The translations under genes were made by a program, and so were the position numbers. From positions 62,001-126,000 of the IMG/VR virus record IMGVR_UViG_3300017971_000185: a stretch of 64,000 nucleotides of DNA, one strand, 5' to 3'. Below, one piece after another: positions 197 through 19,981 of this stretch. A model generated the notes under the pieces. That model saw only the letters and a list, made by a program, of their open reading frames with translations, searched no databases and had not been told where the DNA came from. The first letter of the stretch is position 1; the number at the start of each line of letters is the position of its first letter.

Positions 197-676
197 CTGC
201 CGATCTACGAATACCACTGCACGGGTTGTGGGCTCCACTTCGAGAGGATGCGCCCGGCGAAGAAGGCTGAGGAAGCCGTCAATTGCCTGAGTTGCGGTGG
301 GTCCGTACAAGCACAACTTTCGGCTCCCGAGTTTGCATTTTCGCACGCGCCGGATGGCGCAGGTCCGCAGAACACGGGAGTCAGCGGCTTGGATCTTGAG
401 GTTGATCGGGTGATCGGCCGAGAGGCGGAGCAGCAGTGGGCCAAGGTAGCTGCGCGCCAAGACCGCAAGCATCAGGTTCTTGCGGCCAATCCCGGCGCGA
501 CCGGCTTCGATTTGAGCCGGACCCCGGACGGCGATTACCGCGTCATGCAGCCCGACGAACGGAAGGCTGCGGAGACTGCGCGAGGTCTCCATCAAGAGGC
601 TCAAAGTGAGATCTTGAAGACCAAGAAAGGGAAGGATTGGCTCGCGTCACGAGTGACGGGAGCGGCTGGCCCCTGA
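197..676 (+). CDS. FmdB-family zinc-ribbon protein, CTG start
   Basis: Extending ORF 248..676 upstream gives (M)PIYEYHCTGCG...CLSCG, the FmdB N-terminal signature; GGAGG at 186-190 lies 6 nt before CTG at 197. Confidence 0.85.
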   Translation: MPIYEYHCTGCGLHFERMRPAKKAEEAVNCLSCGGSVQAQLSAPEFAFSHAPDGAGPQNTGVSGLDLEVDRVIGREAEQQWAKVAARQDRKHQVLAANPGATGFDLSRTPDGDYRVMQPDERKAAETARGLHQEAQSEILKTKKGKDWLASRVTGAAGP

Positions 677-689
677 GTCAGCAGTCATG

Positions 690-900
690 CCTCTCCGCGA
701 GGAGAGTGCCAGATAAGAACACACAGATCAGACCCATACGCAGATGACTCTGGGACGAGGCACCGCACGCCTCACACGACCGCGCCTTCGGGCTGCCAGA
801 TAAGAACGCACACATAAGTCGCAGAAGCAGAAACAGACCCAGATGAGGACAGGCTGTTCGCAGCCGCATTTCTGACTGCAACCAGGCGGGTTCACCCGAC
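690..900 (+). ncRNA. Candidate structured leader/ncRNA with CAGA repeats upstream of sheath
   Basis: Hairpins CTCTCC-GCGA-GGAGAG (691-706), GCC-TTCG-GGC (784-793), GGCTG-TTCG-CAGCC (852-865), CGGG-TTCA-CCCG (887-898); duplicated TGCCAGATAAGAAC (707-720, 794-807); about 9 CAGA units. Confidence 0.5.
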
Positions 901-938
901 AGGGAGAATTTACCCGCAACCAAAACTCAGAGGTTCCA

Positions 939-3900
939 ATGCCAGACGGCACCCAGATTCCTGGTCACATTTACGCGCCCCCCAACGTCTACGTCGAGAC
1001 TCAGACTGACACGCCGGTTCAAGCACCGATTCAGGGTGTTCGCATTCCGGTGTTCATCGGCACGGGCAACGAGGTTCTGACTCAGACGGATCTCGCGGTG
1101 GTTCGCGGGTCGTCTTCCAGTGTTGACCAGCAGGTTCCGCAGGAGGACATGACCGGCCGCGCGGTTGTCGCAATTCTGGCTTCCGGCGAGGTCGTCCTGG
1201 GTGACTTCGATGGTGATCGGCGGCTCATCCAGGTGCGCAATTATCCCATCGTCACGGGCGACGGGACGGGTACCACGGCGACGGATGCAGCCAGCATCCA
1301 GGTGACGATCAACGGGCAGCCTGACGTGGTTTTGAACGTCCAGGGGGACAGAGGGGTGCTTGAGCTTTCGACGGCTCCAGGGCTCCATGACGACGTGAGA
1401 TGCACGTATTTCTTCAACCGGACCGACACGCTGATCACGGACGACGTGAGCGATCAGGTGACTGCGGATCCCGCGCTCATTTACGGGAGCGGCGAGGAAC
1501 CCGCAGGCGGCTACGACATCACGGTGGACAACAATGAGTTGATCCTGACCATCGATGGCGTCGAGACCACCATCAGCCTGGGGACGCCGGGCGTGAAGCC
1601 CGCAGCTACCGTGGTCTCGTTGATCAACGGAGCGGCCTCTTCTACGTCTCTTGTGGCTTCGCTCTACACCACGAATTTCGGCGGCACTGCCATCCAATTC
1701 GTGGCCGACGAAAACCTCATCGTTGGTGCCGGTACGGCCAACACACTTCTTGGTCTGACCACGGGTGACGCGACCAATCGGCGCTCGACGTTCTACACAT
1801 TCCAGGGTCCGATCGTTGACGGTTCCAACGGAGGAATCACGACCACGGACACCGGGAAGGTGACGGTCCGCGTCAACAATGTCCAGGTCATCCCCACGTC
1901 CGTCAATGGATCGACGCGAGCGGTGACGTTGCCCTTTGCTCCGGCTGCTGGCTCGACCGTCACCATCGAGTACTTTTTCAATAGTTGGCAAGATACCTTC
2001 GACTATCTGGCGAACATCAACCTCACGGAGATCACCCGAGTCGGCATCGTTCCGGGGAACAGCGATTTCGTGCAGGGTGCGGACTTCGTGCTCAAGGATG
2101 ATGTCATTGTCTGGGGTACGTCGGTTCTCATCACTTCGGGTGTTCACACCGAAGGAAGCACGTACTTCGGTGGAGATGGAGGCCAGGTCAGCGCGCTCTT
2201 GGTGGATGCGCAGACGTACTTGGAGGAAGCCACTCCTGTCACGGATGCGACGGTCAGCCCGCCAGTTACGAGTCGGACGAAATTCGACCTTCCGTTCCAG
2301 CCCACGACGGGCAACGGACGCAACACGCCGATCGGGTTGAGTCTGTTCCAGACGGTCAGCAACAACCGTATCGATCTTCCGACCAATCGCCCGGATCTGG
2401 TGATCGCCTATTGGGGCTTCTCGGTCGAGGATGCTTTGCAGCGTGGTCCGGTGGACGTGACAGCGGTCGAGGGAACCAGGATCACTTTGAAGGATCCCGT
2501 GGACGTGGGTGCAACGGTCTACGCCACGTTCTACTACAACACGCTCGTAGATGAGGAGTACAGCCTGGTTTGTGACGTGGCTGGTGCTTCGGGCATTGGT
2601 ACCTATTTCATCCAAGACTCGAATAGCAACGACATGTTCACGCCGCGGTTTGGCGTGAAGGGGGCTGCGCTCACGGGCATCACCATCCAATTCCCGAGCG
2701 GCAGCGAGCTAACCCCGGACGTGCGTTTCGAGAGTGGTACGGACGGTCCGGTCGAGGAGACGGTCACGGTCTCGTTCGCGAGCATCGATGACACGATTGC
2801 GAAGTACAGCGTGCCCGGATCGGGACCGTACTTCACGATCGAGGATGCCTCTGATCATGCACGTTTCTTGATCGACGGCACGGCACCGACTGGTGGCGGA
2901 GCGGGAATCGATCTTGCCCGTGTGGACGGAATCACCGGCTTGGGCGTGTCGGCCAGCTTGCTGGGCGAGGAGATCGAGTATGACGTAGCCTCGGGCAGCA
3001 CGACCTACGACATTACGGCCGGGACCAACGACGAGGTTTCGGTCACGGTCGATGATGTGCTCATTACGTCGATCGCTGCGGCAGGAACGGGTGTCAACGC
3101 GGACAACTACGTTGACGCGCTCAATGCTTTCGCCAAGCTGCAACAGTTTGCTCCGTTCTACACGGCACAGACACGTTTCGTGGGGTCGACGGTCATTACT
3201 GCCGGCGAGTACGACACTTTGGTCATGCACTACAATGGTGCTGTGGCAGGCCCATCGGGTGCGATCACGGCGATCATTCCGCCGCTGACCTACGCCAGCC
3301 CCATGGCTCTGGCAACGGCTCTGGATGGAGTGATTGCAGCCGCAGTCGGTGGTTTGGGTCCGGCGTTTGCCGGGTTGGCGATCAACGTTACTGTGGATGC
3401 CAATAGCCGGCTCCGATTCACGTTGCAGGCGGCGACGGGAGACATCGGCACTTTCGCGGCCGGTGGTGTCATCACCGTGGCGTTAGTGCCGGTCGTGGGT
3501 GACCAGATCATCTTCACGGATTGGGCTGGGAACCAGGCAGCACTCACGGCAGATACGGCCACAACGCCAGGCGGCAACAACTTCGACGTGTCGTCCGGTG
3601 TGGCAGCCACGATCGCTGGTCAGATCGCTATAGCGATTCAAGATGTGACGAACAACGTGGCTTCGATCGTGACCACGACGGGCGCTGTTGGTGTGACGAT
3701 TCCAGTGGTGCCAACTGTTCCGGGTACGCTCGGAAACCGGGTCGTCATGGCCGAATCCGCCGCAACTCCGGCAACCTTCACGTTCGTACAGCCTTCGGGC
3801 GCGACGGACTTGGCAGGTGGCTATTTGGAGTTTGCGGACGCACCGACGCTTGCCAGCGATTTCGCGATTCTGGCAGGCATCAGCGTGGCTCCGGCACCGG

Positions 3901-6278
3901 GAGGATTGCAGACCAAGTTGCTCAACGGAGACATCGCTCGGCGCTTCTCGGTAGCGGGCGGTTCCGGTGCGCTTATCTACGATCGCATCATTCTCCGCAA
4001 CCGCATCATGCCTGGATCGGGCAGCGTGGCCGGGCCTTCCCAGCTTGCGCAGACAGAGCTACGCATCGAGGGGAACAATGCGATCACGGAGACGGGTCTC
4101 CAGCCCAACGACGCTGGGTTGGCGGCGATGGGGGCGGTCGTGCAGCCAGCGACGCTGTTTGGCGAAGTGGGGTTTGTCAGCGGTCAGGTGCCGACAGGCG
4201 CCTACGGGGATGCTCGCGACGGGCAGCCGGTGGTGACGTTCTTCGCAGACGGAGGCACACAGCCGCAGAACAACGTGTTCAAGATCAACATCGATGGCAT
4301 CATGGTGAACGTCACGTTCACGGATGCTGCGGGTGTGGTCATTCCGGCTGGCGGCACAGCAGACGTACCGTTGGGGCCGGGAACGATCGCGAACACGATT
4401 CTGGCACAGCTAGACGCCGCCGCAGTGGCGGCTGGGTTGCCCGCGGGCACGTTCTTGCCAGAAGGCGCTGGTATTCGGATCGTGAGCGGCACGTCTCGCG
4501 TGTCCTCAGCGATCACGGTTGGAGCCGGGAATGCCAACGATGTGTTGGGATTCTCGTCTGGCGGCACGGCGGCACGGACGGAGGTAGAGCCCGAGCAGAT
4601 TGCTTCGGCTCTCATGGCGCATCACGACGCAACGGTATCGGCCAAGCTCCTGAGCTACTCCTCGCCAGGAGTGACCTACTTCGCTGGCTTGGCTCTTGCT
4701 GGTGTCATCAGGGATGCGGCGAATGCCGAATTCCTGTACCTCCAGAGTCAGGCGAGCACGGTCGGAGGTCTGGGTCTGTCGAGCAGCATTGCGCTGCTAC
4801 AGCCCACGGTTGGAAACGGTAGCTGGCTGCTTCCAGGCACGGGCATCAATGCCGAGGTTGGTGACGGCGCATCCGGTGAGGAAGGCTTCAACGGATACTA
4901 CGTCACATCGTCCGATCCGACAGACGGGTCCGGGTCAGCGAACACGTCGAGGCTCAACAACGGAGTGGGTCAAGATGGCGTGATCGGCCAGACGTATCGA
5001 GATACCGTCACGGGTCTCACGTTCACGGTTCTGGCACGTGAGGGTGGCGGGGTGTACCCGACTGGTGTGGGTGCAACCTTCACTTTCGAGGTACGCAATA
5101 AGGTCATCACGGACAGCAACCTTCCGGTCAACACAATCCCCGGAATCGAGCTTTTGGTGACGAACACCACTGGCGTCGCGGTCGGGGACACGGCTGTGGT
5201 CGATACGATCGAGCGCGGGGGCAGCGAGCCTGCCGTGGGCGATCTCTACTACGCGACCTACAACTACCAAAAGGAAAGTTTCGACACTGGCTTGTACACA
5301 CGGCTGGCAACGATCGAGCGTGTGTTTGGTGCAACATCGCCAGAGCATCTTCTGTCCCTGGCGGCGTATGTGTCGATCATCAACGGGGCGGTTGTCGTTG
5401 GGCTCAAACAGGTTCCCAAGCAGCCCAACAGCAATCAGGGCAGTATCACGGACTACTTCGATGCCGTGGACGATGTGCGTGGAGTCCTCCCAGGTGGGGC
5501 GAGGCTCAGCACGCTCACTCCGTTGCGTGGAGACTCGGAGGAGCTATTCCAGAAGATCAGTCAGCATGTTGATCTCCAGTCCAGCATCCGGCTGCGATCG
5601 GAGAGAACCTCGATCTTTGGCGTTTCCTCGGGGACGCAGCCCTCGGCTGCGGGAGACCTGGCCGAGTTGCTGGGCAACACCCGGATGAGGATGGTCTACC
5701 CAGACATCGCCAAGATCACGCTGACCGATGCGGTGAACAACGACAAGCAATTCCTGGTTGACGGCACGATTCTCTCGGCGGCAATGGCAGGAAACCGAGC
5801 AAGCCCGAACATCGACGTGGCAACGCCATGGACACGGGCACGATTGCTCGGGTTCGATGAGCTTGCTCGTATCCTCGATGCGGTCGAGCAGAATCAGGTT
5901 GCCGTGCGCGGCGTGACGATCTTGGAGGATCGCCGTCCGGCAATCAGTGTGCGCCATGGGCTCACGACGGATGTCACCAACGTCCTGACCAAGACCCCAA
6001 CCGTGATGACGATTGCGGATGAGGTACAGCAGCAGACTCGCGTGACGCTGGACAGGTTCATCGGGGTCAAATTCCTGCCCGGTATCCTGAATCAGATCGA
6101 AGGTCGCCTGACCTTCATGCTCAAGGGGCTCATCGCGGCGGAGATCATCGCTGCCTTCACTGGAGTGCAGGCTCAGACAACGAGTGATCCAACGGTGGTT
6201 GCGGTCGAAGCATGGTATCAGCCTGTTTTCCCGCTACTATACATCATCGTCACCTTCAACCTCCGCTCAGTTTTGTGA
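939..6278 (+). CDS. Contractile tail sheath protein, very large with inserted domains
   Basis: N-terminal YAPPNVYVE (PGVY-type motif); C-terminal sheath domain ...TVMTIADEV...DRFIG...DPTVVAVEAWYQPVFPLLYIIVTFNL; upstream of tube and tape measure genes. Confidence 0.9.
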   Translation: MPDGTQIPGHIYAPPNVYVETQTDTPVQAPIQGVRIPVFIGTGNEVLTQTDLAVVRGSSSSVDQQVPQEDMTGRAVVAILASGEVVLGDFDGDRRLIQVRNYPIVTGDGTGTTATDAASIQVTINGQPDVVLNVQGDRGVLELSTAPGLHDDVRCTYFFNRTDTLITDDVSDQVTADPALIYGSGEEPAGGYDITVDNNELILTIDGVETTISLGTPGVKPAATVVSLINGAASSTSLVASLYTTNFGGTAIQFVADENLIVGAGTANTLLGLTTGDATNRRSTFYTFQGPIVDGSNGGITTTDTGKVTVRVNNVQVIPTSVNGSTRAVTLPFAPAAGSTVTIEYFFNSWQDTFDYLANINLTEITRVGIVPGNSDFVQGADFVLKDDVIVWGTSVLITSGVHTEGSTYFGGDGGQVSALLVDAQTYLEEATPVTDATVSPPVTSRTKFDLPFQPTTGNGRNTPIGLSLFQTVSNNRIDLPTNRPDLVIAYWGFSVEDALQRGPVDVTAVEGTRITLKDPVDVGATVYATFYYNTLVDEEYSLVCDVAGASGIGTYFIQDSNSNDMFTPRFGVKGAALTGITIQFPSGSELTPDVRFESGTDGPVEETVTVSFASIDDTIAKYSVPGSGPYFTIEDASDHARFLIDGTAPTGGGAGIDLARVDGITGLGVSASLLGEEIEYDVASGSTTYDITAGTNDEVSVTVDDVLITSIAAAGTGVNADNYVDALNAFAKLQQFAPFYTAQTRFVGSTVITAGEYDTLVMHYNGAVAGPSGAITAIIPPLTYASPMALATALDGVIAAAVGGLGPAFAGLAINVTVDANSRLRFTLQAATGDIGTFAAGGVITVALVPVVGDQIIFTDWAGNQAALTADTATTPGGNNFDVSSGVAATIAGQIAIAIQDVTNNVASIVTTTGAVGVTIPVVPTVPGTLGNRVVMAESAATPATFTFVQPSGATDLAGGYLEFADAPTLASDFAILAGISVAPAPGGLQTKLLNGDIARRFSVAGGSGALIYDRIILRNRIMPGSGSVAGPSQLAQTELRIEGNNAITETGLQPNDAGLAAMGAVVQPATLFGEVGFVSGQVPTGAYGDARDGQPVVTFFADGGTQPQNNVFKINIDGIMVNVTFTDAAGVVIPAGGTADVPLGPGTIANTILAQLDAAAVAAGLPAGTFLPEGAGIRIVSGTSRVSSAITVGAGNANDVLGFSSGGTAARTEVEPEQIASALMAHHDATVSAKLLSYSSPGVTYFAGLALAGVIRDAANAEFLYLQSQASTVGGLGLSSSIALLQPTVGNGSWLLPGTGINAEVGDGASGEEGFNGYYVTSSDPTDGSGSANTSRLNNGVGQDGVIGQTYRDTVTGLTFTVLAREGGGVYPTGVGATFTFEVRNKVITDSNLPVNTIPGIELLVTNTTGVAVGDTAVVDTIERGGSEPAVGDLYYATYNYQKESFDTGLYTRLATIERVFGATSPEHLLSLAAYVSIINGAVVVGLKQVPKQPNSNQGSITDYFDAVDDVRGVLPGGARLSTLTPLRGDSEELFQKISQHVDLQSSIRLRSERTSIFGVSSGTQPSAAGDLAELLGNTRMRMVYPDIAKITLTDAVNNDKQFLVDGTILSAAMAGNRASPNIDVATPWTRARLLGFDELARILDAVEQNQVAVRGVTILEDRRPAISVRHGLTTDVTNVLTKTPTVMTIADEVQQQTRVTLDRFIGVKFLPGILNQIEGRLTFMLKGLIAAEIIAAFTGVQAQTTSDPTVVAVEAWYQPVFPLLYIIVTFNLRSVL

Positions 6279-9633: not shown

Positions 9634-9634
9634 C

Positions 9635-9697: not shown

Positions 9698-9698
9698 A

Positions 9699-10770: not shown

Positions 10771-10788
10771 GTCGTATCTCCTGTCTCT

Positions 10789-10816: not shown

Positions 10817-10824
10817 ATAGTCGC

Positions 10825-11280: not shown

Positions 11281-11282
11281 GT

Positions 11283-12023
11283 TTAGCTCGCTATCTCGCA
11301 CTCTTTGTTGTACTTGGCCTGAGCGGTCTCGATGTGACGGCATTTGCGCCGAAACTGGAAGCCCTCGCACTCGCAATTCCAGCGGTTGTTCTTGCCAAGC
11401 CAGACTCGGTAAGAACCATCCTTGGCGCTCGGGATCTCGCACTCCCATTCGACTTCGCCACGGAAGCACTTGAGATCGTCACGAGCGGGCGGGGTGGTGT
11501 ACTCCAGCCCGAGCGCTTCGAAAACCTCGCGTTCGGTCTTACCGGCGATGCGCCGATACCAGCGCTTTTCAGTCTCGCCCTTCCGCTTGACGTGAATGAA
11601 CGCGTAGCCCTGGGACTCGTCCGTTTCCTCGGGATCACATGGCTTGTATACGCCCTTTTCGTTGAGGAGTAGCCCCAGCGCGGCGGCGTGGCTTCGCATC
11701 TTGATGTTGAAGGTATGCGGGCCGGTCAGGTAGAGCCACGCGGCGCCGAAGCCATCTTCATCGGGCGCTCGGATCACGTCTACCTGCATGCCACCCACGA
11801 TGAGCCGGATCTTGGCATCCTTTCCTTGGACCCACTCGAAACCAGCTTTCTCGATTTCCGCCTGTGTGGGTAGCGTGCCGAGGAACACGATATCGACATC
11901 GCGAACGTACTCTTTGCCACGACGGAGAGAGCCGGCGATCTTGGCTTCCTTACCGAGCAAGGCGAGGACGGGAGCTACTCGCTCGACCGCGACGCCCTGG
12001 GGAATCTTCTTACCTTTGCTCAT
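11283..12023 (-). CDS. Minimal X-family DNA polymerase with C-terminal SWIM zinc finger
   Basis: AGSLRRGKEYVRDVDIV, QVDV, YLTGP..FNIKMR, LNEKG, TEREVFEALGLEY..P..R; then YRV...WNCECEGFQFRRKCRHI (CxC-xn-CxH). Confidence 0.88.
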   Translation of the reverse strand: MSKGKKIPQGVAVERVAPVLALLGKEAKIAGSLRRGKEYVRDVDIVFLGTLPTQAEIEKAGFEWVQGKDAKIRLIVGGMQVDVIRAPDEDGFGAAWLYLTGPHTFNIKMRSHAAALGLLLNEKGVYKPCDPEETDESQGYAFIHVKRKGETEKRWYRRIAGKTEREVFEALGLEYTTPPARDDLKCFRGEVEWECEIPSAKDGSYRVWLGKNNRWNCECEGFQFRRKCRHIETAQAKYNKECEIAS

Positions 12024-12303
12024 CGTTGGTCTCCTTTAGCCGATACCAGAGGAAGCCTCGGTCTACACACTCAGCGACTCGAATGGCAGTGCTCTCCAGC
12101 ACGAGATGCTTGACCGGATGCCCGGACGAGCAAACCGGACACGGTCCGGTGAATGAGCCGGTGATTCGTATTCGTGCTCCGCCAAGCTCGGAAGGAAGCC
12201 TGACCCAATCGGGAGCGCCGTCGCCCACGAGGTACATGCTCTCGTCCTCCGTGGAGGGTGAGGCGAAGTCGCCGGGGCGGCGGTTGAACCATGCGGTGGT
12301 CAT
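12010..12303 (-). CDS. Hypothetical protein (CPVC, possible Zn site)
   Basis: ATG in a TGATG overlap with the upstream stop. Confidence 0.6.
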   Translation of the reverse strand: MTTAWFNRRPGDFASPSTEDESMYLVGDGAPDWVRLPSELGGARIRITGSFTGPCPVCSSGHPVKHLVLESTAIRVAECVDRGFLWYRLKETNDEQR

Positions 12304-12519
12304 CAGGACGCCTTGGCTTCGGGAGCACTCTCCAGCTTGAGATCATCCCCGATGGCTGTCAACGCATCTTGGAAGGACCCCACGAAGGTGTTGCGAGAGG
12401 CGGTTATCACGTTGATGTGACGGCCGCGCCTCTCCTTGGGTCCGGCGAGTCCGCGGTCGATGCTTGTCCTGGTAGACGAGGGTCCGGTCGTCGCGGGAGG
12501 TTTCGAGAAGAAGGTGCAT
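12303..12519 (-). pseudogene. Small gene split by a +1 frameshift
   Basis: SD+ATG at 12519 (MHLLLETSRDDRTLVYQDK) and the C-terminus coupled to the next gene (IDRGLAG...APEAKAS*) are in different frames; span 217 nt = 3n+1. Confidence 0.5.
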
Positions 12520-12537
12520 CTTTTGCTCTCCAACCTC

Positions 12538-12565
12538 TCTACGCGAGATCCCCGAAGAAGTTTAC
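12538..12565 (-). promoter_or_regulatory. ECF-like early promoter, copy B
   Basis: GTAAACTT-N12-CGCGTAGA. Confidence 0.8.
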
Positions 12566-12619
12566 ATTTCAAAACGCGCGTAGGGCGCGGGCAAATCCTT
12601 CGATAGAAGCCTGTCTACG

Positions 12620-12877
12620 ATGGCTCTGGCCAAGATCATTAGGTTTGTCCGCTTGGCGGACGGCAAGACCAAGCTGGAGGCGAAGCGTGGAGCGAAGAAT
12701 CCCTACTTGAACACGCCGCCGACTGTGTTGAAACGCGATCTCGAAAAGGAGACCAATCCCATGAAACGCAAGTTGATGAGCGACGCATTGAATGCTTGGC
12801 GGATGACGCATGGGAATCCTTTGGCTCGTTCTGCGGCTCGTGTAGCTGCGCGTTGGCTCGACAGCGGAGGGACCTGA
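12620..12877 (+). CDS. Small basic hypothetical protein
   Basis: 85 aa, K/R-rich, stop 2 nt before the SpeD-like ATG. Confidence 0.65.
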   Translation: MALAKIIRFVRLADGKTKLEAKRGAKNPYLNTPPTVLKRDLEKETNPMKRKLMSDALNAWRMTHGNPLARSAARVAARWLDSGGT

Positions 12878-12879
12878 CG

Positions 12880-13275
12880 ATGCATGGGCCGTTTGCTGGT
12901 TGGCACCTAATCGTGGATGCTCTCGTCGGGTCTGGAGATCCCACTGACCGGTTGGCGGATGTTGAGTTTCTGGAGACGTTTCTCAGGGATCTCGTGATCC
13001 ATCTGGATATGAAGATCCTGGGCGGTCCCTACATGAATGTGGTCGAGCCCGATTCGAAGCTCATTGAGACGGAAGAGGATGAGGGTGGGGTGACAGGATG
13101 TGTAGTGATCACAACGAGCCATATCTCACTGCACACGTGGCCGCTACGCAACCGCTTCTCCCTCGACATCTACTCGTGCAAGCAGTTTGACCCGGATGCA
13201 GCTAAGGACTTCATCACGGGACGACTTAGTTGCACGGAGCGAAGTATCAACTGGACGCAGCGGCTCTGGCCTTAG
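12880..13275 (+). CDS. speD: S-adenosylmethionine decarboxylase-like pyruvoyl proenzyme
   Basis: GWHLIVD, GGVTGCVVITTSHISLHTWP, DIYSCK; GGAGG SD before ATG 12880. Confidence 0.85.
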   Translation: MHGPFAGWHLIVDALVGSGDPTDRLADVEFLETFLRDLVIHLDMKILGGPYMNVVEPDSKLIETEEDEGGVTGCVVITTSHISLHTWPLRNRFSLDIYSCKQFDPDAAKDFITGRLSCTERSINWTQRLWP

Positions 13276-13590
13276 CTACTTGTCCTTGTCTAGATCGGCC
13301 TTGCAAGCGTCCAGGTCTTCATACGTGATGAGCAACGGGCGCTCATCCACATCGGGGAAACACTGATTGGGCACGCACTGTGACTTCACGTCCCAGCCAT
13401 CGACGGTGGTCACGATGGAGCAGGTGAAGCCATCCTTGCAGCCGTCCTCGCCGTGGGGTGCCTCTTCATCGCATTCGTCCGCAGGCGCATTCACGACAAT
13501 CGGATCGCTCTGCGTGTCAGCGGCAGGCGCCGTCTGCAAAGGAGCGTTGGCCGTCAGAGCGAGGAACCCGGTGAGGATGGTGGTGAGCAT
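13276..13590 (-). CDS. Exported Cys-rich protein with signal peptide
   Basis: Hydrophobic N-terminus MLTTILTGFLALTANA, 6 Cys, acidic; GGAG SD. Confidence 0.7.
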   Translation of the reverse strand: MLTTILTGFLALTANAPLQTAPAADTQSDPIVVNAPADECDEEAPHGEDGCKDGFTCSIVTTVDGWDVKSQCVPNQCFPDVDERPLLITYEDLDACKADLDKDK

Positions 13591-13607
13591 TTCTTGTCTC
13601 CACCCAG

Positions 13608-13635
13608 TCTACGCGGGTTTTGTGGAGAAGTTTAC
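13608..13635 (-). promoter_or_regulatory. ECF-like early promoter, copy C
   Basis: GTAAACTT-N12-CGCGTAGA. Confidence 0.8.
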
Positions 13636-13654
13636 TGCGCCAAGTCCGCGCCCC

Positions 13655-13666
13655 TAGCTTGTCTAT
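13655..13666 (+). promoter_or_regulatory. Candidate late motif TAG-N5-CTAT before tube gene
   Basis: TAGcttgtCTAT. Confidence 0.35.
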
Positions 13667-13722
13667 TTTCAAGCGCTTAACGAGGGTGGTGCGTCGCGCA
13701 TTCCCCGCCCTTAGGAGACAGT

Positions 13723-14520
13723 ATGCCAAACACCGATCTAGTCCAGGGAGGCGCAGCAGGGCTCCAGGGCTCTAGCTCCGTCTACGACTACGGGACTTCC
13801 CCCAACACGAGAACAGCCGTTTCACAGAAGGTGAGGATCTTGTCCCCGGCCTACGGGACGACAAGTCAGCTTCTTCAGATTGGCGTGCTGACCAACTTCA
13901 CACCTTCCGAGAGTCGCACTGTCGAGCCCCTACGCGGCATTGGGTTTGGCGATCAGATCGCTGAGCTTGTGCCGTCCGTGACGACAGAGATGACGCTGAG
14001 CTTTGAGCGAGCGTTGCTCTACATGGCGAATCTCTGGCAGGCGACTGGTTACGCTGGAGGCATCGACGGGCCCGTGCGTTCGTTGAAGCATCACAGGTGG
14101 CCGTTCGATGTGGAGGAGCAGCTTGTGTTTTCGACTCTTGTCGATATGGCACTTGGAGTCGAGAACGTGGGCTACCAGGGTCAGGGTTTCCAGGGAGGAA
14201 CGGCTCAGATCGTCTATCCCGATCAGCTAGATGGCGAGACCGGCCCGACTCCCAACGGTCCTTTCCCGCAGGGTGGCCAGCAGGGACACACGGCCATCAT
14301 CACCATGTACGAGGCGTGCTGGTTCACGTCTTGGTCCAAGACCAACATCACCCGCGACACGGGAATGCTCATGGAGACGGGAGATGCGATGGTCACCGAC
14401 GTTCACGACTTCGCCTCCGAGTACGGAGAATTTCTGGCTACGGGCAACGACCCATCCGTAGGCCAGCTTGGATCAGTCAGGTTTGGCGATCCACAGGCAG
14501 GAGGGACGCCGTTCGGCTAG
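13723..14520 (+). CDS. Tail tube protein
   Basis: IGVLTNFTPSESRTVEPLRGIG..ELVP, PFD, YEACWFTSWS tube-fold pattern; AGGAG SD; position between sheath and tape measure. Confidence 0.8.
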   Translation: MPNTDLVQGGAAGLQGSSSVYDYGTSPNTRTAVSQKVRILSPAYGTTSQLLQIGVLTNFTPSESRTVEPLRGIGFGDQIAELVPSVTTEMTLSFERALLYMANLWQATGYAGGIDGPVRSLKHHRWPFDVEEQLVFSTLVDMALGVENVGYQGQGFQGGTAQIVYPDQLDGETGPTPNGPFPQGGQQGHTAIITMYEACWFTSWSKTNITRDTGMLMETGDAMVTDVHDFASEYGEFLATGNDPSVGQLGSVRFGDPQAGGTPFG

Positions 14521-14526
14521 GGTACA

Positions 14527-14708
14527 GTGGCCTAAAACCGAGCAGTCGGTGGTTTCCAAGAATCAGACGCAGATGAATATCAGATCATATCCAGATTCCC
14601 GTGCTGTCTCCTAAACCCTATATCAGATCCAGACCCACATAGATCAGACCCAGATTCGTTTGCGCTGTTTTCCAGGCCACCGCTTGCTCTCTCAACGGGA
14701 GTAGCGGT
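14527..14708 (+). ncRNA. Candidate structured leader with CAGA repeats and SD-sequestering hairpin
   Basis: Closing stem GTGGCCT (14527-33)/AGGCCAC (14674-80) around 8 CAGAY units; hairpin 14679-14708 pairs GGGAG just before ATG 14709. Confidence 0.5.
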
Positions 14709-15932
14709 ATGACAATCAACTTTGAGGCTCTGCAAGCCTCGCTCGAAAAGATCGGGCAACTAGGCCAAGCGGAGCGTTCTTTCAAAGCAGGCGACCACGC
14801 GATCACCATTCGTGTGCTTCAAGCACGTGAGGAGATCGAGGTCGATAAGTACGCTCAGATAGCCTGGGATGAGGCTTCGGGAGATGAAGACCGGGCTGCC
14901 TTGGCGGACTACATCGATCGGGTGCGGGTAGCCACTCTGTCACACGTCATCGTTCAGATTGGCGATCAAGACCTTCGACGGGAGGAGTTTGTCGAGACGG
15001 GGGAGGAGGACGAGAACGGGAACAAGGTCAAGAAGCCTCGTTATCTCGTGATTCGCGAGATGATCGGCAAGTGGAGTCGGCCTGTTTTGCACATGTGTTA
15101 CCTCAACTACGGGACTTTGGTTCAAGAAGTCGAGAGTGCTTCTAGTAAGAGTATCGAGTCCTCAGAGGCTAACGTCGGGGGAGAGATCGATCGCCTTCAA
15201 ACGCGGTTAGAGAACCTCAAGCGCATTCAGAGTGAGCAGAAGGCCATGGCTGATCGTGCCGCCATGACGGCGCAGACACGAGAGGCTCTCGGTGAGTACA
15301 GCCAAGCCCATGAGGATCACATTGACCGACTGGCAACTGTGACGGGAGAGGTTGTAGAAGAGTCCGAGTCCGAGCCCGAGGCCGCGCCCAAGGCTGAAGG
15401 CGCGACCGAGCCCCCGAAGCGGCCTGTCAGACGAGAGCCGACGATACCACGTCGGGCAGTGCCGCCTGTGCGCGCTCAGAAGTCCGAACCTGTTGATGCG
15501 GACGGGATACCGCTGCCACATGAGGGGGATTCGTTCTACGATCCGGCCGATGGGGATGCGGCTGTAGCGGCTGAGCACAAACGTCTGGAAGCTTTCCGAC
15601 AACAAAAGATGCGGGCGCAATCGAGACCCACAGCAGAACCAGAAGCGCCTGAATCTCCAGAACCGGAACCGGAGCCCCTTGAGCCTTTGCCTGGGGTGAC
15701 GCGAGGACGGAAGCCGCCACACCGAGACGCACTCAACACGGCTGACGCCGTGCTCAATCTTCAGGGAGAGACGGTAGTGGACCAGCCCAAAGCTGCCACG
15801 GAAGCAGTAGAGGGTGTTCGATTGCCGACAGAGACCCTAAGTCCTCGATCGAAGCCAACAGAAAAACCAACGAAGGCTCCTGTGGATCCTCCACCAACGG
15901 GCTCAAGAAACCCGCGGTTTAGAGGTGCGTAG
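14709..15932 (+). CDS. Probable tail assembly chaperone with long Pro/Glu-rich C-terminus
   Basis: Position between tube and tape measure; ITIRVLQAREE chaperone-like start. Confidence 0.6.
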   Translation: MTINFEALQASLEKIGQLGQAERSFKAGDHAITIRVLQAREEIEVDKYAQIAWDEASGDEDRAALADYIDRVRVATLSHVIVQIGDQDLRREEFVETGEEDENGNKVKKPRYLVIREMIGKWSRPVLHMCYLNYGTLVQEVESASSKSIESSEANVGGEIDRLQTRLENLKRIQSEQKAMADRAAMTAQTREALGEYSQAHEDHIDRLATVTGEVVEESESEPEAAPKAEGATEPPKRPVRREPTIPRRAVPPVRAQKSEPVDADGIPLPHEGDSFYDPADGDAAVAAEHKRLEAFRQQKMRAQSRPTAEPEAPESPEPEPEPLEPLPGVTRGRKPPHRDALNTADAVLNLQGETVVDQPKAATEAVEGVRLPTETLSPRSKPTEKPTKAPVDPPPTGSRNPRFRGA

Positions 15933-15934
15933 TA

Positions 15935-17089
15935 GTGTTGTCTCCGCCCGCACCAACGCTTGAACAACGCAGTCCCATGTATGCGGACGTGCGTCATCTA
16001 CTGACGCCTGGTTTTTTGACAGAGACGGTTCGTATCAACGAGACAGCGTTGGTATTGCGGACGTTCAACCGGGGAGACTATTTCATGCTCCTCAATCGAG
16101 GAGTCGAGTCCGAGAATCCGGCCTTTCTCGACTGGATCATAGCTGCCGCTGTGTGGGTGGTTGATGGGCAGCCGGTTCTAGAAGATCCGTCTGCTACCTA
16201 CCACATTCGGGAGATGTGCGCGGGGTTTCCGAGAGTCATCAAGCACGATCTCATGGCGGTGGTTGGTCATCTTCGCGAACGAGTCGAGACAGCATTGAAC
16301 CGGGTGGAGGCTTTCTTTTACGAGGATGAGTCTCGCTTTATCTGGCGTGCTCATGGGCCACGCATTACGGGAGCAACCGGCGTTCCTGGCAGTGAGCGAT
16401 TGGGTGTGAATGCGTTGCAGGAGTTGTGGATCGCTTACAACGAAGTTGAGGATCACCGGGAGTCCTTCGTCGCACAATGGACGCAGACGAAGTTGATCGC
16501 CCAAACCATGGCTCCGAAGGGGATCAAGAAACTCAACAAGTCGGATGAGATGGCTCAGCGTCGGTTGGACCAGGAGCGCGAGGCTGTACGAACGAAGGCG
16601 TACTATCAATTCATTGGGCGCGAGGAGCTAGCGGCCAAGAGGGTGCCGGAGCAGAGCAACAGTCCCTATGTAGAGCGGTATGTTGTTCGTTCCGTCGAGG
16701 ATATGCAGGAGGAGTATCGGAAGTGGCGTCAGGGCATCAAGGATGAGCACGATCTGATCGTGGACGCCTACAAAGCGAAGATTCGCGAGAAGATGGAACG
16801 CGAGCGACATGAGCGGGAGGAACGGATTGTAGAGGTCGATCGGGCAATGGAGACTGAGGGGGTCTCTGAGCCGCCTCTTCGAAACGTGTTGGGGCGCATT
16901 GAATCAATGGAGCCAGGATGGGCGAAGGGCAAGCGGATCTACTCAGGAGGAAAATCAGAGCGTCTTTACGAGCGCTATCTCAAGAATGACGTTGTGCCGG
17001 GTGCCATTCGCATGAAGGACGGCCAAGCAATCTCTGTTCCCGACACGTTACAAGAACGTGTGGAAGCCAGGAAGCCTGGAGGAAAATAG
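15935..17089 (+). CDS. Probable second tail assembly chaperone
   Basis: Synteny; LVLRTFNRGD start; charged helical C-terminus. Confidence 0.55.
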   Translation: MLSPPAPTLEQRSPMYADVRHLLTPGFLTETVRINETALVLRTFNRGDYFMLLNRGVESENPAFLDWIIAAAVWVVDGQPVLEDPSATYHIREMCAGFPRVIKHDLMAVVGHLRERVETALNRVEAFFYEDESRFIWRAHGPRITGATGVPGSERLGVNALQELWIAYNEVEDHRESFVAQWTQTKLIAQTMAPKGIKKLNKSDEMAQRRLDQEREAVRTKAYYQFIGREELAAKRVPEQSNSPYVERYVVRSVEDMQEEYRKWRQGIKDEHDLIVDAYKAKIREKMERERHEREERIVEVDRAMETEGVSEPPLRNVLGRIESMEPGWAKGKRIYSGGKSERLYERYLKNDVVPGAIRMKDGQAISVPDTLQERVEARKPGGK

Positions 17090-17092
17090 CCG

Positions 17093-19981
17093 ATGCCTGC
17101 TCCAGATAGCATCATCGAGATGGCTGCACGCCTCCAGGTGGACGCCGCCAGCCTTCACCATGCGGCCAGAGCAGTCCACAAGTCGATGGGAGATGCCATC
17201 ACGGGCAGCGTGGACCAGGGCATGAAGGCGAGTTACCGGCTGATCAAACGCGGACTTGAACGCGCTGCGTCGGCATCAGACTTCGCCAAGAAGATGCTGG
17301 ATGCTCGCAAGACGCGGAAAGAGCTTGTGGACTTTGCTGGGAAGGTGGGCGACTGGTTTGGGAAGGGGTACACGAAAGCACAAAAAGTGTTTTTCGATGA
17401 GGTTGACAAGTATCGGAAACGCAGCAGACGGAAGGAGCAAGAACACGAAGATCTGATGCACGATCGGCGCAGGCAAGCTGCGCAAGAGATCGAGAGCTTT
17501 CGTAAGAAGGAATTGGAAGAGCAGATCGAGACTTACGGCAGGGGAATGACCGGAGTGCTCGAAACCCTGAAGAGCGGGGAGCTAGCAGGGTTAGCGGGAA
17601 TCGTCGGGGCCGCTGGACGAGCGGGAGTGACTAGGGGACGCGCGTGGCAGGCTGCGGGCGAAGCAGGGGACGCAGGCAAACTACAGAAGGCCATGGCGAA
17701 GTTGGGGAAAGGCATGGTAGCGGTGGGGAAAACACTTGCGGTAGTAGGCGCGACGGCTGGGGTCTTAGCTATAATCGTGAAGCTCTTGGTGGAAATTGCA
17801 GATGGGGCTTCTATAGTCAAAAAGTCGTTTTTGGAGATGGGTGGCGCAGTCGCCATGGGACGGACTTCGGTGGCGGCTTTGGATAGACAGATGGAGGCTT
17901 TCTACAAAACTGTGTACGAAGGCGACTTCAAGACACACTGGAGTCTCGTCAAGGATGAGATGATCGGTGTCACAAAGGCCATGGCGGATGCCGGGATGCA
18001 CATGGCACGGCTGAGGGCGCAAACGAAGGCGGGCGCCAGTGTCATGGGAACCCTCAAGGACAACATCGGGTTCGCAGTGACCTACGCCACCATGTTTGGC
18101 AAGCAGATCGATGAGGTTGGGCGTGACATGGCGACGCTCTCCTTTGAGACCGGCCTTTCTATGGAAACGATCGCGCACGGGATGGCGGAGATCTCAGAGA
18201 TCACGAGAGTTGCGGGATTCGACGCCAAGCGGTTCTACGGGACCGTTCTGGAAGTCACCAGTGGCATGGGCATCTACAGCCGGCGTGTGGAAGAAGCCGC
18301 GGGGATGTTGAAAACGCTCAGCCATATTCTGGGAGAAACGGTGGGTGCGGATTTCCTCAAAGGAATCGAGCGCAGCTTCAAGGACATGCCTATCACGCAG
18401 CGGATCCAGTTTGTTGCGATGGCGGGCACCGAGAACGTTATGCGGCTCATGAAGGACGCCGCGGAAAGGCAAGGACGGGCTGTAGAGGAAACCTTGGCTG
18501 ACATGGTCGGACAAGAGGACAAACGAGCATTGGCAATCGTGAAGGCATTTGGCGGAAGCGCGGACAAGGTGGCGGAAGCAATTGAAGGCATGACGAAAGA
18601 AGAGTACCGAGCGGCTGAGGCAAAGGCGCTTCGCGTCGGGGGTCCTGGCACGGCAGAGCTTCTCAAAGAGCTGACTCGTCTCCGCAGGTTGCAAGAAGGC
18701 GCTGTGGATGAGCGCAAGACTACTTTGGCACTGCAAGACTGGCCAGCCACGCACAAATTGTTGGGGCAACTGTTTGCGGCCATGCGGCCATTGGGGGGCA
18801 TCGAAAAGAACATCGATAGGCTGAATGACATAGAGGCCCTAGCCTCGGAGGCTGGCTGGAGCATGTCGGTCGAACAGTTGCATACACTGCAAGATTTGGT
18901 GGGCCGGTCGCAAGCAGGCTGGAAAGACTTGGAGAACGCGACGGGAAAGGTCAGAAAACAACTGGCAGAGCAGTATGGGTTGACCGTGAAAGATGGGAAG
19001 TTGCAGGAGAAGGGCTCAGGCAAACTTGTGGAGTCGTTTACGGATTTTTTGATTGCGACTGCGACTCTTGAGAAGGATACGAAGAAGCAGACAGATCTTC
19101 TCACCGACCAGGCCAACCTTGCTAAGGGAATACGCGACAAAACCGAGGGGATGTCAAAAGATATTGAGAATCTCAAGGACGAACTCATCGAGAAGATCCA
19201 GATTGACCTGCACGATCTGGTTACGACGATACCCGGTAAAATTGAGGATCTGATAGATGCCATAGATAGCATTACAGGAAAGAAAGGAACGGCTAAGGGG
19301 GATACAGGTGAAGAGTATCAAACGGCATCTACTGTCGGGGCGGCTCTTAAAAAGGGGACGGAAGGGACGTGGGTGCAGCCTGTAATTGAGGCCCTTGGCA
19401 CGGGAGAGTTTGCTGTTGGTCAGACGACCGAACAGGCGGTTCAGGCGGGGTTGCGTTCTGCCTTCGAGGCATGGGCGTTGAGGCCAACACGAGGGACTGA
19501 GGAAGAAAAGAGACAAAAAAGAGTCGAGTGGATCACAGGGGAGACAATCTCGGAGGACCCCGCATATTTGCGGATGTTGGAGAAATTGAGGGGAGCTGGG
19601 ATGTCTGAGGAAATGATTAAGCAACGAAGTGCCGTGGCCATTGACTTGGCTGATTTAGCTAAGGAACAATTGTTGGCAGAACATCCTGGCGCAGGGCCCT
19701 TTGTCGTAGGCGGCACCATGGCAGGCGCAATGGCTCCGGTACTGTTATATGGGCGCGAGGCTGGCTTTACTGGTCCTGAGCAGCCGGCGGGGGATTTTGT
19801 TGTTACCGATCGAGGTGATGTCATCAAGGCAGACCCGAGAGACACCATCGTGGGGTTCCGCGGTAGAGCAGGCGGTCCGGGCGCTGGGGCCGTGTACGTC
19901 AACATCTATGGAGGCGATCGGCGTGAGGTTTACGAGACCGTGCGCCAGGCTCTCCGTGTCGCGAGGGTGGCTACTGCGTAA
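17093..19981 (+). CDS. Tape measure protein
   Basis: 962 aa A/G/K/E-rich helical, hydrophobic segment VAVGKTLAVVGATAGVLAIIVKLLV, C-terminal VYVNIYGG. Confidence 0.75.
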   Translation: MPAPDSIIEMAARLQVDAASLHHAARAVHKSMGDAITGSVDQGMKASYRLIKRGLERAASASDFAKKMLDARKTRKELVDFAGKVGDWFGKGYTKAQKVFFDEVDKYRKRSRRKEQEHEDLMHDRRRQAAQEIESFRKKELEEQIETYGRGMTGVLETLKSGELAGLAGIVGAAGRAGVTRGRAWQAAGEAGDAGKLQKAMAKLGKGMVAVGKTLAVVGATAGVLAIIVKLLVEIADGASIVKKSFLEMGGAVAMGRTSVAALDRQMEAFYKTVYEGDFKTHWSLVKDEMIGVTKAMADAGMHMARLRAQTKAGASVMGTLKDNIGFAVTYATMFGKQIDEVGRDMATLSFETGLSMETIAHGMAEISEITRVAGFDAKRFYGTVLEVTSGMGIYSRRVEEAAGMLKTLSHILGETVGADFLKGIERSFKDMPITQRIQFVAMAGTENVMRLMKDAAERQGRAVEETLADMVGQEDKRALAIVKAFGGSADKVAEAIEGMTKEEYRAAEAKALRVGGPGTAELLKELTRLRRLQEGAVDERKTTLALQDWPATHKLLGQLFAAMRPLGGIEKNIDRLNDIEALASEAGWSMSVEQLHTLQDLVGRSQAGWKDLENATGKVRKQLAEQYGLTVKDGKLQEKGSGKLVESFTDFLIATATLEKDTKKQTDLLTDQANLAKGIRDKTEGMSKDIENLKDELIEKIQIDLHDLVTTIPGKIEDLIDAIDSITGKKGTAKGDTGEEYQTASTVGAALKKGTEGTWVQPVIEALGTGEFAVGQTTEQAVQAGLRSAFEAWALRPTRGTEEEKRQKRVEWITGETISEDPAYLRMLEKLRGAGMSEEMIKQRSAVAIDLADLAKEQLLAEHPGAGPFVVGGTMAGAMAPVLLYGREAGFTGPEQPAGDFVVTDRGDVIKADPRDTIVGFRGRAGGPGAGAVYVNIYGGDRREVYETVRQALRVARVATA

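What the first reader, a model, noticed from the sequence alone, without database searches (positions are those of the whole stretch)
14527..14708. Second CAGA-repeat element after the tube gene, linked to an SD-occluding hairpin
Seen: it shares exact words with the first element: AGATCAGACCC (725/14641), ACGCAGATGA (738/14567), CAGACCCAGAT (834/14645). Eight CAGAY units are enclosed by GTGGCCTAAAAC...GTTTTccAGGCCAC. That stem overlaps by 2 nt a hairpin (ACCGC-t-TGCTCTC/GGGAGTA-GCGGT) that buries the chaperone gene SD. The two elements bracket the sheath-tube region, which encodes the highest-copy tail proteins. Inference: one factor reads both sites and sets tail protein stoichiometry by translational switching or RNA processing. 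Iterated DNA binding sites are an alternative.
Basis: partly seen in the sequence, partly recalled or inferred. Interest (0 to 1): 0.7.

Follow-up and report, generated by a model that had tools for sequence, protein, structure and literature searches.

The report
Structured RNA leader between tail genes
The CAGA repeats are this huge phage's own version of a folded RNA leader of about 175 bases, conserved across a large group of huge phages, that sits between the tail-tube and tail-chaperone genes, hides the chaperone gene's ribosome-binding site, and has a sister copy in front of the sheath gene.

Summary
In the 497-kb genome such dense clusters in long non-coding gaps occur only before the sheath gene (677-938) and after the tube gene (14521-14708).

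CAGAY itself is not the conserved signal. Orthologous gaps in relatives hold 0-5 copies. What is conserved is an architecture:
- a -10-like box right after the tube stop codon;
- a closing helix (14540-14552 with 14677-14689);
- A-rich segments R1 and R2, which here are CAGAY;
- two boxes of consensus UUGNGCUGU at fixed spacing;
- a hairpin that buries the ribosome-binding site (Shine-Dalgarno, SD) just before the AUG.

Covariation supports the helices: 84.8% of cells paired against 66% in shuffles, and 46 of 52 pairs show double changes. That model did not detect our copy, which is assigned by a sequence profile and synteny. A related leader precedes the sheath gene, where the SD is free.

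Gene labels hold: sheath, tube, and a chaperone whose N-terminal domain matches the HK97 tail assembly chaperone (Z 8.1).

Best reading: a cis-acting structured mRNA leader that throttles or switches chaperone translation. The SD-closed and closing-helix folds differ by 2.5 kcal/mol. No Rfam family matches. The trigger is unknown, and no RNA data were available.

The parts
248..676 (+). Upstream 142-aa ORF; its stop codon (674-676) abuts element 1
   Evidence: ORF list. No Pfam or PHROG hit. In relatives the sheath leader also begins right after the upstream stop codon.
677..938 (+). Element 1: structured leader before the sheath gene
   Evidence: Fold z = -2.59. It is the only significant genome hit of the HMM built from relatives' sheath leaders, matching 829-918 at E 0.004. 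Seven CAGAY units.
681..687 (+). Element 1 closing helix, 5' strand GCAGUCA (pairs with 873-879)
   Evidence: MFE. Relatives have GGUCGC with GCGACC/GCGACU at the same place, which are compensatory changes seen by inspection.
707..744 (+). Element 1 module copy 1 (38-nt direct repeat, A/C-rich, holds CAGAY units)
   Evidence: the repeat finder family D1.
794..831 (+). Element 1 module copy 2 (82% identical to copy 1)
   Evidence: the repeat finder family D1.
873..879 (+). Element 1 closing helix, 3' strand UGACUGC, within the conserved GACUGCAACCAGG block
886..917 (+). Element 1 terminal hairpin (GCGGGU with ACCCGC), upstream of a free SD
   Evidence: MFE. Equivalent CAGGGC...GCCCUG hairpins in relatives.
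929..933 (+). Sheath gene SD (AGAGG), not sequestered
   Evidence: P(SD paired) 0.50 here. Mean 0.52 over 18 sheath leaders, none above 0.8.
939..6278 (+). Tail sheath gene (1779 aa)
   Evidence: The C-terminal 400 aa resemble the sheath families PF04984 and PF17482 in the Atlas feature search, score 0.92-0.94. Synteny with the annotated sheath of phage Tunturi_5.
13723..14520 (+). Tail tube gene (265 aa)
   Evidence: Atlas feature and structure neighbours are tail-tube families. More than 1,200 homologues at 60-86% identity on huge-phage contigs. The homologue in Tunturi_5 is annotated as a virion structural protein.
14521..14528 (+). -10-like promoter box GGTACAGT; predicted transcription start near 14534-14535
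   Evidence: G, T and A of the box are conserved in at least 90% of 43 relatives' leaders. Genome-wide, GGTAnnnT peaks 6-7 nt upstream of ORF starts. The start site is inferred, not mapped.
14540..14552 (+). Closing helix P1, 5' strand GAGCAGUCGGUGG. It can alternatively form the local hairpin 14537-14550.
   Evidence: the repeat finder inverted pair I2, 85% complementary. Cognate 5'/3' pairing is better than non-cognate in relatives. Helix 1 of the covariance-model alignment is 87.6% paired, with double changes in 6 of 6 pairs.
14559..14578 (+). R1a: 5' strand of the extended helix, pairs with 14654-14671. Holds CAGAC at 14564 and CAGAU at 14570.
   Evidence: Duplex and MFE predictions. R1:B2 cognate advantage, p = 8e-6.
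14562..14596 (+). R1: first A-rich repeat segment (two 13-nt units, four CAGAY)
   Evidence: R segments in relatives are A 35%, U 17%.
14599..14607 (+). Box B1 (CCGUGCUGU; family consensus UUGNGCUGU)
   Evidence: In the subclade consensus it pairs locally with the CAGAU at 14581. No family-wide partner was found.
14620..14657 (+). R2: second A-rich repeat segment (two 13-nt units, four CAGAY)
14660..14668 (+). Box B2 (UUGCGCUGU, 9 of 9 to consensus), 3' strand of the extended helix with R1a
14677..14689 (+). Closing helix P1, 3' strand CCACCGCUUGCUC. It overlaps the 5' arm of the SD hairpin by 11 nt.
14679..14708 (+). SD-sequestering hairpin (14679-14691 pairs with 14697-14708; SD GGGAG at 14697-14701)
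   Evidence: P(SD paired) 0.997. The hairpin is present in nearly all relatives with different sequences. Helix 11 is 91% paired, with double changes in 12 of 12 pairs.
14709..15932 (+). Tail assembly chaperone-like gene (407 aa: folded N-terminal domain plus a Pro/Glu-rich tail)
   Evidence: AlphaFold2 model of residues 1-160 has pLDDT 91. Best PDB match is the HK97 tail assembly chaperone 2ob9: Foldseek rank 1 and VIA-align Z 8.1 over 102 of 107 residues. It sits directly after the tube gene.

Best explanation
Element 2 is a cis-acting, structured mRNA leader of about 175 nt for the tail assembly chaperone gene. It is the ortholog of a leader conserved in a large clade of huge phages. Element 1 is a related leader for the sheath gene.

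Shown:
- A conserved -10-like box sits right after the tube stop codon.
- A 5' segment pairs with a segment about 125 nt downstream (closing helix P1). This extends into a helix between the first A-rich repeat segment (R1) and box B2.
- The last 30 nt form a hairpin whose 3' arm is the Shine-Dalgarno sequence.
- The CAGAY units are this lineage's version of the A-rich, U-poor segments R1 and R2. CAG pairs with CUG of the invariant boxes UUGNGCUGU.

Inferred:
- The hairpin keeps chaperone translation low relative to tube. The sheath leader leaves its SD free.
- The 3' strand of P1 overlaps the anti-SD arm, so the RNA can take two nearly isoenergetic folds, SD closed or SD released. This would make it a translational throttle or switch.
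- The trigger is unknown. Candidates are RNase III cleavage of the long helix, a phage protein, or upstream ribosomes.
For: Orthology and synteny:
- Tube gene, then a long gap of mostly 210-290 nt, then the chaperone homologue, in nearly all of 80 relatives.
- An HMM of relatives' leaders hits the 497-kb genome only at element 2 (E 1.4e-4). The sheath-leader HMM hits only element 1 (E 0.004). Cross-hits run from E 1e-7 to 3e-4.

Fixed geometry:
- B1 to B2 is about 70-78 nt and B2 to AUG is 49-57 nt in 33 leaders.

Structure:
- A covariance model seeded on 7 leaders finds full-length matches in other clusters down to E 6e-6.
- On that alignment, 84.8% of cells pair against 66.4% in shuffles and 35-46% in slid controls. 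46 of 52 pairs show double changes.
- Cognate 5'/3' pairing beats non-cognate by 7.9 kcal/mol over 18 clusters, p = 8e-4.
- R1:B2 cognate advantage has p = 8e-6.
- The 5' segment uses 5-15 nt of the anti-SD arm in most leaders, cognate -21.1 against -15.0 kcal/mol, p = 1.6e-5.

SD occlusion:
- P(SD paired) is 0.82 in chaperone leaders (0.997 in ours), 0.52 in sheath leaders and 0.56 in background genes.

Two states in our copy:
- -48.4 kcal/mol with the SD hairpin against -45.9 kcal/mol with P1 forced.

Strand:
- The sense strand folds better than the antisense strand by 4.8 kcal/mol, p = 0.0015.

Promoter:
- GGTAnnnT peaks 6-7 nt before ORF starts.
Against: - No transcript data exist. No RNA run was listed, so the 5' end, processing and even transcription of the gap are inferred.
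- The covariance model seeded on one subgroup did not detect our own element. Our copy lacks the apical CCUCCCC/GGGGAYGG hairpin and is shorter.
- The covariance-model alignment is fitted to the structure, which inflates pairing.
- The sequences in the cognate tests are related, so the p-values are optimistic.
- Ensemble folding of full leaders still leaves the SD mostly paired (0.68 against 0.79 locally), so a switch is not demonstrated.
- Region 14515-14730 as a whole does not fold better than shuffles.
- Box B1 has no consistent partner.
- In some relatives a terminator-like hairpin lies between the -10-like box and the leader, which is odd for a promoter.
Confidence: 0.6

Rival explanations
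1. One sequence-specific factor, a protein or an RNA, recognises the CAGAY units in both elements. It acts on RNA or on DNA and sets tail protein stoichiometry.
For: - CAGAY clusters in long non-coding gaps are confined to these two gaps and to the + strand.
- They form regular 13-nt units with 21-22-nt spacing within each module.
- The two elements share 10-12-mers.
Against: - The motif is not conserved where the elements are. There are 0-5 CAGAY in orthologous leaders, and only 2-4 at 84% tube identity.
- CACAU-type repeats replace it in a sheath leader at 79% identity.
- Several units are predicted to be base-paired.
- What is invariant across the family are the UUGNGCUGU boxes and the helices.
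Confidence: 0.12
2. RNase III-type processing and stability element. The long irregular duplex (P1 plus R1:B2, about 25-30 bp) is cleaved. This separates the abundant tube mRNA from the chaperone mRNA and fixes the fate of the SD hairpin. It is compatible with the best explanation and is one candidate trigger for it.
For: - A long-range helix of about -35 kcal/mol in our copy, and comparable helices in relatives.
- An intercistronic position that starts at the upstream stop codon in both elements.
- Established precedents from general knowledge: phage T7 intercistronic RNase III sites and the lambda N leader.
Against: - No end-mapping data exist.
- The helices are interrupted by bulges.
- A conserved -10-like box suggests a separate transcript rather than processing of a polycistronic one.
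Confidence: 0.15
3. A DNA-level element. The repeats and boxes are operator or promoter architecture for late transcription, as iterated protein-binding sites downstream of the -10 box.
For: - A -10-like box at the 5' end.
- Direct repeats with spacing of about two helical turns.
- Fixed box spacing.
Against: - Compensatory changes keep base pairing rather than sequence.
- The sense strand folds better than the antisense strand.
- The boxes fit neither a -35/-10 arrangement nor the sigma-54 GG-N10-GC spacing, checked by inspection of the sequences shown.
- The last hairpin contains the SD and abuts the AUG.
Confidence: 0.08
4. A cis-acting processive antitermination RNA, like put of phage HK022, placed at the head of long late operons.
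For: - Two related structured copies per genome.
- Each sits just downstream of a likely start of transcription and ahead of very long genes. A run of 24 co-oriented crude ORFs (about 64 kb) begins with the tube gene and follows element 2. Element 1 precedes the 5.3-kb sheath gene.
- Some relatives carry terminator-like hairpins nearby.
Against: - No similarity to put or any Rfam antiterminator family.
- SD sequestration points to translation.
- The sheath leader has no promoter box directly upstream in relatives.
Confidence: 0.05

Closest known systems
Riboswitch-type or translational-operator leaders in which a closing helix competes with an SD-sequestering hairpin
   Same: The SD lies in the 3' arm of a conserved, covarying hairpin. 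The closing helix's 3' strand overlaps the anti-SD arm. The interior has a conserved core with invariant nucleotides. The two folds are close in energy.
   Different: No ligand or protein is known. No Rfam family matches. Ensemble folding does not show clear bistability in most relatives. There are two paralogous copies per genome, one of which leaves the SD free.
Phage T7 intercistronic RNase III sites and the lambda N-leader RNase III site
   Same: Long irregular intercistronic duplexes in phage mRNAs next to a ribosome-binding site, where processing changes translation or stability (general knowledge). Here a duplex of 25-30 bp is predicted.
   Different: Much larger (175-290 nt), with conserved single-stranded A-rich segments and sequence boxes. 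Cleavage is untested.
Phage Mu mom leader with Com (a translational activator that opens an SD-occluding hairpin)
   Same: Late-gene translation is gated by a hairpin that hides the start region. A trans factor could open it.
   Different: No Com-like protein was identified. The leader is far larger and is duplicated before a second gene.
Long-range RNA pairing that sets translation ratios of neighbouring cistrons in MS2 and Q-beta phages
   Same: Distant segments pair to control access to a downstream start. The element begins at the upstream gene's stop codon, so upstream ribosomes could perturb it.
   Different: This is a DNA phage. The conserved 5' strand lies 20 nt or more past the stop codon, beyond a terminating ribosome's reach. 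A promoter-like box intervenes.

Membership tests
Any Rfam 15 family | Match to a curated covariance model | tested here: not met
   Window 1-20000 and ten relatives' loci were searched at E up to 1. Only unrelated sub-threshold hits appeared elsewhere: nadA, mir-1188 and msiK.
Huge-phage tube-to-chaperone leader family (defined here) | Position between tube-gene and chaperone-gene orthologues | tested here: met
   Synteny in nearly all of 80 loci. Our gap is 14521-14708.
Huge-phage tube-to-chaperone leader family (defined here) | Sequence-profile match | tested here: met
   nhmmer with an HMM built without our genome gives a single significant genome hit, at window 14511-14695, E 1.4e-4. Alignment with the nearest relatives has 75% mean column identity.
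Huge-phage tube-to-chaperone leader family (defined here) | Two UUGNGCUGU boxes at fixed spacing | tested here: met
   B1 matches 7 of 9 at 14599 and B2 matches 9 of 9 at 14660. B2 to AUG is 49 nt. B1 to B2 is 61 nt, shorter than the usual 70-78 nt.
Huge-phage tube-to-chaperone leader family (defined here) | Closing helix and SD hairpin | tested here: met
   14540-14552 pairs with 14677-14689. Hairpin at 14679-14708. Both helices covary in relatives.
Huge-phage tube-to-chaperone leader family (defined here) | Apical CCUCCCC/GGGGAYGGUY hairpin | tested here: not met
   Absent from our copy and weak in its nearest relatives. It is present in most others, where helix 10 is 95.6% paired.
Huge-phage tube-to-chaperone leader family (defined here) | Covariance-model match | tested here: inconclusive
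   Model R1, seeded on one subgroup with an effective sequence number of 1.19, did not score our element.
SD-sequestering translational switch | Mutually exclusive pairings with comparable energy | tested here: inconclusive
   Our copy gives -48.4 against -45.9 kcal/mol. Overlap with the anti-SD arm is seen in most relatives. Ensembles keep the SD mostly paired.
SD-sequestering translational switch | A trigger (ligand, protein, processing) that shifts the fold and changes translation | not testable with these tools
   No RNA data. The phage is uncultured.
Iterated DNA binding sites (iterons or operators) | The repeat unit sequence is conserved in orthologous elements | tested here: not met
   0-5 CAGAY in relatives. 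Different repeats in the L089 sheath leader.
Sigma-54 promoter (reading of the boxes as -12 TTGC) | GG-N10-GC spacing | tested here: not met
   By inspection of the sequences, it fits some group A leaders but fails in our copy and in group B.
Tail assembly chaperone (downstream gene) | Chaperone fold, with the gene directly after the tube gene | tested here: met
   AlphaFold2 pLDDT 91. HK97 chaperone 2ob9 is Foldseek rank 1 (E 0.18) and VIA-align Z 8.1, with the next match at 5.7. Atlas leads were weak, 0.77-0.79.
Tail assembly chaperone (downstream gene) | Programmed -1 frameshift giving two products | not tested
   The next ORF starts 2 nt after the stop codon (15935). No slippery-site analysis was done.
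Tail tube protein (upstream gene) | Tube fold or family | tested here: met
   Atlas feature and structure neighbours are tail-tube families, and all ten best hits that carry a Pfam family share one family or clan. My own AlphaFold2 model was too poor to use, pLDDT 34.

The most novel reading that the evidence does not exclude
The two leaders belong to an undescribed family of regulatory RNAs specific to huge phages. A conserved core of about 130 nt (the UUGNGCUGU boxes, A-rich segments and apical hairpin), closed by P1, senses a phage or host factor. That factor could be a tail protein, an RNA-binding protein or a small molecule. Through P1 competing with the anti-SD arm, the core switches chaperone translation, while the paralogous copy before the sheath gene reads the same signal with a different output. 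Together they would coordinate tail-component stoichiometry during assembly.
Probability: 0.2. Interest if true: 0.8.

Novelty: new variant of a known kind. Interest (0 to 1): 0.6.

Why it matters
Huge phages are known almost only from metagenomes, and their gene regulation is essentially unmapped. This is a large, covarying RNA element found at the same two tail-gene junctions in many such genomes. The tube protein family has more than 1,200 members, and 472 stretches in IMG/VR encode a relative.

It gives a concrete, testable handle on how these phages set the ratio of high-copy tail proteins (sheath, tube) to the low-copy chaperone. It is also a candidate for a new RNA family in public libraries.

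The leaderless-type promoter motif seen in passing would help annotate transcription units in this clade.

Tried and rejected
- Rfam search of the window and of ten relatives found nothing.
- Nucleotide search of 13700-16000 against phage records found nothing. A protein search found only an uncultured 485-kb phage and Tunturiibacter phage Tunturi_5.
- RNA-seq: no RNA run was listed. Only DNA metagenomes from sediment and seawater hold the sequence.
- The AlphaFold2 model of the tube protein from a shallow alignment was unusable, pLDDT 34. Sequence searches of PDB with the sheath and tube proteins gave nothing.
- RNAalifold on plain MAFFT alignments of all leaders gave no or almost no structure. 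Structure appeared only within subgroups or after covariance-model alignment.
- Covariance model R1 did not find our own copy.
- Reading the boxes as a -35 element or as a sigma-54 -12 element was rejected on inspection of the sequences.
- A small upstream ORF through R2 that ends in box B2 is present in three close relatives (MKMKMG...FAL). It is not frame-conserved elsewhere, so it was rejected.
- Hfq A-R-N triplets, CsrA GGA motifs and Rho-binding C-rich sites do not fit across the family.
- R2:B1 pairing as a family-wide inner helix shows no cognate advantage, p = 0.5.
- Literature searches found no description of such a leader. The search was shallow.

Full report
**Context**

The window is bases 62001-126000 of a single 497,194-bp contig with 57.7% G+C. 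It carries very long ORFs and belongs to an uncultured huge phage. Identical stretches are in IMG/VR and in sediment and seawater DNA metagenomes. The only related deposited phage records are an uncultured 485-kb phage (59% tube identity) and Tunturiibacter phage Tunturi_5 (36%). In Tunturi_5 the homologue is a virion structural protein lying downstream of the annotated sheath gene.

**Gene labels**

Pfam and PHROGs give nothing for the genes flanking the finding.
- **Sheath.** The C-terminal 400 residues of the 1779-aa protein (939-6278) resemble phage sheath families.
- **Tube.** The 265-aa protein (13723-14520) has tail-tube families as its feature and structure neighbours. It has more than 1,200 homologues at 60-86% identity on contigs of up to several hundred kb.
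- **Chaperone.** The first 160 residues of the 407-aa protein (14709-15932) fold with pLDDT 91. They match the HK97 tail assembly chaperone best: Foldseek rank 1 and VIA-align Z 8.1 over 102 of 107 residues, with the next match at 5.7.

**Observation**

- Windows with 5 or more CAGAY per 180 nt occur at five places in the genome, all on the + strand. Only the gaps before the sheath gene and after the tube gene are long non-coding clusters.
- The eight units of element 2 are four copies of a 13-nt unit.
- Element 1 is two copies of a 38-nt unit.

**Conservation**

In nearly all of 80 related loci the tube gene is followed by a long gap, mostly 210-290 nt, and then the chaperone homologue. A minority have a short gap of 80-130 nt.

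CAGAY counts in these gaps are 0-5, so the motif is not conserved. The architecture is:
- a GGGTAnnnTG box after the stop codon;
- a 5' segment ending in GGUGG;
- an A-rich, U-poor repeat segment (R1);
- box B1, consensus UUGNGCUGU;
- a CCUCCCC/GGGGAYGGUY hairpin;
- a second A-rich segment (R2);
- box B2;
- CCACCG;
- a hairpin holding the SD directly before the AUG.

The spacings are nearly fixed: B1 to B2 is 70-78 nt and B2 to AUG is 49-57 nt.

An HMM made from relatives only hits our genome at element 2 and nowhere else (E 1.4e-4). An HMM of relatives' sheath leaders hits only element 1 (E 0.004). The two leader types hit each other at E 1e-7 to 3e-4. Sheath leaders of relatives show the same order of parts, but with a free SD.

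**RNA structure**

- A covariance model seeded on seven leaders of one subgroup finds full-length matches in other clusters, with E down to 6e-6. It also finds the apical hairpin in sheath leaders.
- On the resulting alignment 84.8% of cells pair. Shuffles give 66.4% (0 of 500 reach the observed value) and slid controls give 35-46%.
- 46 of 52 pairs show changes on both sides. Closing helix 1 is 87.6% paired, apical helix 10 is 95.6% and SD hairpin 11 is 91.1%. This alignment is fitted to the model, which favours pairing.
- Independent tests agree. Cognate 5' and 3' parts pair 7.9 kcal/mol better than non-cognate ones over 18 clusters, p = 8e-4. R1:B2 pairing is cognate-specific, p = 8e-6, whereas R2:B1 is not.
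- The sense strand folds better than the antisense strand, p = 0.0015.

**Our copy**

- The closing helix is 14540-14552 with 14677-14689. The repeat finder also reports it.
- The extended helix is 14559-14578 with 14654-14671. It uses the first two CAGAY units and box B2.
- In the subclade consensus the CAGAU at 14581 pairs with box B1.
- CAGA is therefore largely the complement of the invariant CUG(U) of the boxes, set in an A-rich context.
- Our copy has lost the apical hairpin and is shorter.
- Model R1, which is narrow, did not score our copy.

**SD control**

- The hairpin 14679-14708 pairs the SD with probability 0.997.
- Across chaperone leaders the mean is 0.82. Sheath leaders average 0.52 and background genes 0.56.
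- The hairpin recurs in relatives with different sequences.
- The 3' strand of the closing helix overlaps the hairpin's 5' arm. The overlap is 11 nt in our copy and 5-15 nt in most relatives.
- In our copy the SD-closed fold (-48.4 kcal/mol) and the fold with P1 forced (-45.9 kcal/mol) are close.
- This gives the anatomy of a switch. Ensemble folding of full leaders still keeps the SD mostly paired, so switching is inferred, not shown.

**Start of the RNA**

The box after the tube stop codon matches a motif, GGTAnnnT, that peaks 6-7 nt upstream of ORF starts genome-wide (21 of 384 copies, about ninefold enrichment). This is the signature of -10-only promoters for leaderless mRNAs. It predicts a transcription start near 14534-14535.

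That stem is also not conserved.

**Verdict**

- The CAGA-reading factor is not supported.
- Translational throttling of the chaperone through SD sequestration, possibly switchable, is the best-supported mechanism.
- RNase III processing is a compatible variant.
- No RNA data could be obtained, so function remains inferred.

Noticed in passing
Genome-wide; in the window at 14521-14528: The motif GGTAnnnT (-10-like) peaks sharply 6-7 nt upstream of the first ATG or GTG of ORFs of 80 aa or more (21 of 384 copies; 7.8% at 6-10 nt against 0.9% for random positions). This suggests -10-only promoters and many leaderless mRNAs in this phage.
   Followed up: partly
window 939-6278: The sheath protein is 1779 aa. 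The C-terminal 400 aa score as sheath-like, and by eye the N-terminus also looks sheath-like. The long middle part has no recognisable family.
   Followed up: partly
window 6323-8542 and 12796-13275: Unrelated cargo sits between the sheath and tube genes: a 739-aa ORF with weak HNH endonuclease, helix-turn-helix and DNA-methylase similarities, and an S-adenosylmethionine decarboxylase. A close relative's contig has three minus-strand genes there instead.
   Followed up: no
window 14709-17089: The chaperone-like protein has a folded N-terminal domain followed by about 250 residues rich in Pro and Glu. The next ORF (15935-17089, GTG start) begins 2 nt after its stop codon. Whether a programmed frameshift links them, as in other tail chaperones, was not examined.
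   Followed up: no
Relatives' loci, e.g. L010, L033 and L093 to L096; absent at window 14608-14625: A CCUCCCC-loop-GGGGAYGGUY hairpin recurs at the apex of both leader types. In one subgroup a second copy lies 5' of the closing helix. Its 3' arm looks like an SD followed by AUG. Our window's element 2 has lost it.
   Followed up: partly
window 14585-14602 and 14695-14712: A second inverted repeat: AUUCCCGU, just before box B1, can also pair with the SD region ACGGGAGU. This is another possible way to sequester the SD.
   Followed up: no
Relatives L010, L012, L038, L046, L052, L055, L060 and L061, just after the tube stop codon: Many relatives carry one or two GC-rich hairpins, one followed by a U-run like an intrinsic terminator, between the tube stop codon and the leader. 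Our genome has none.
   Followed up: partly
Genome 36,890-36,960 and 168,770-168,920 (outside the window): Two other CAGAY-dense spots. One is a short leader plus the first codons (MQTNTQT) of a small gene, preceded by GTACGGTGG. The other is a coding Pro-Asp-Ser repeat.
   Followed up: partly
Relatives L011, L044, L056, L058, L066, L073, L075, L078 and L079: About one in six unique relatives have only 80-130 nt between the tube and chaperone genes, often with a GTG start. They lack the two-box leader but mostly still have a hairpin over the SD.
   Followed up: no
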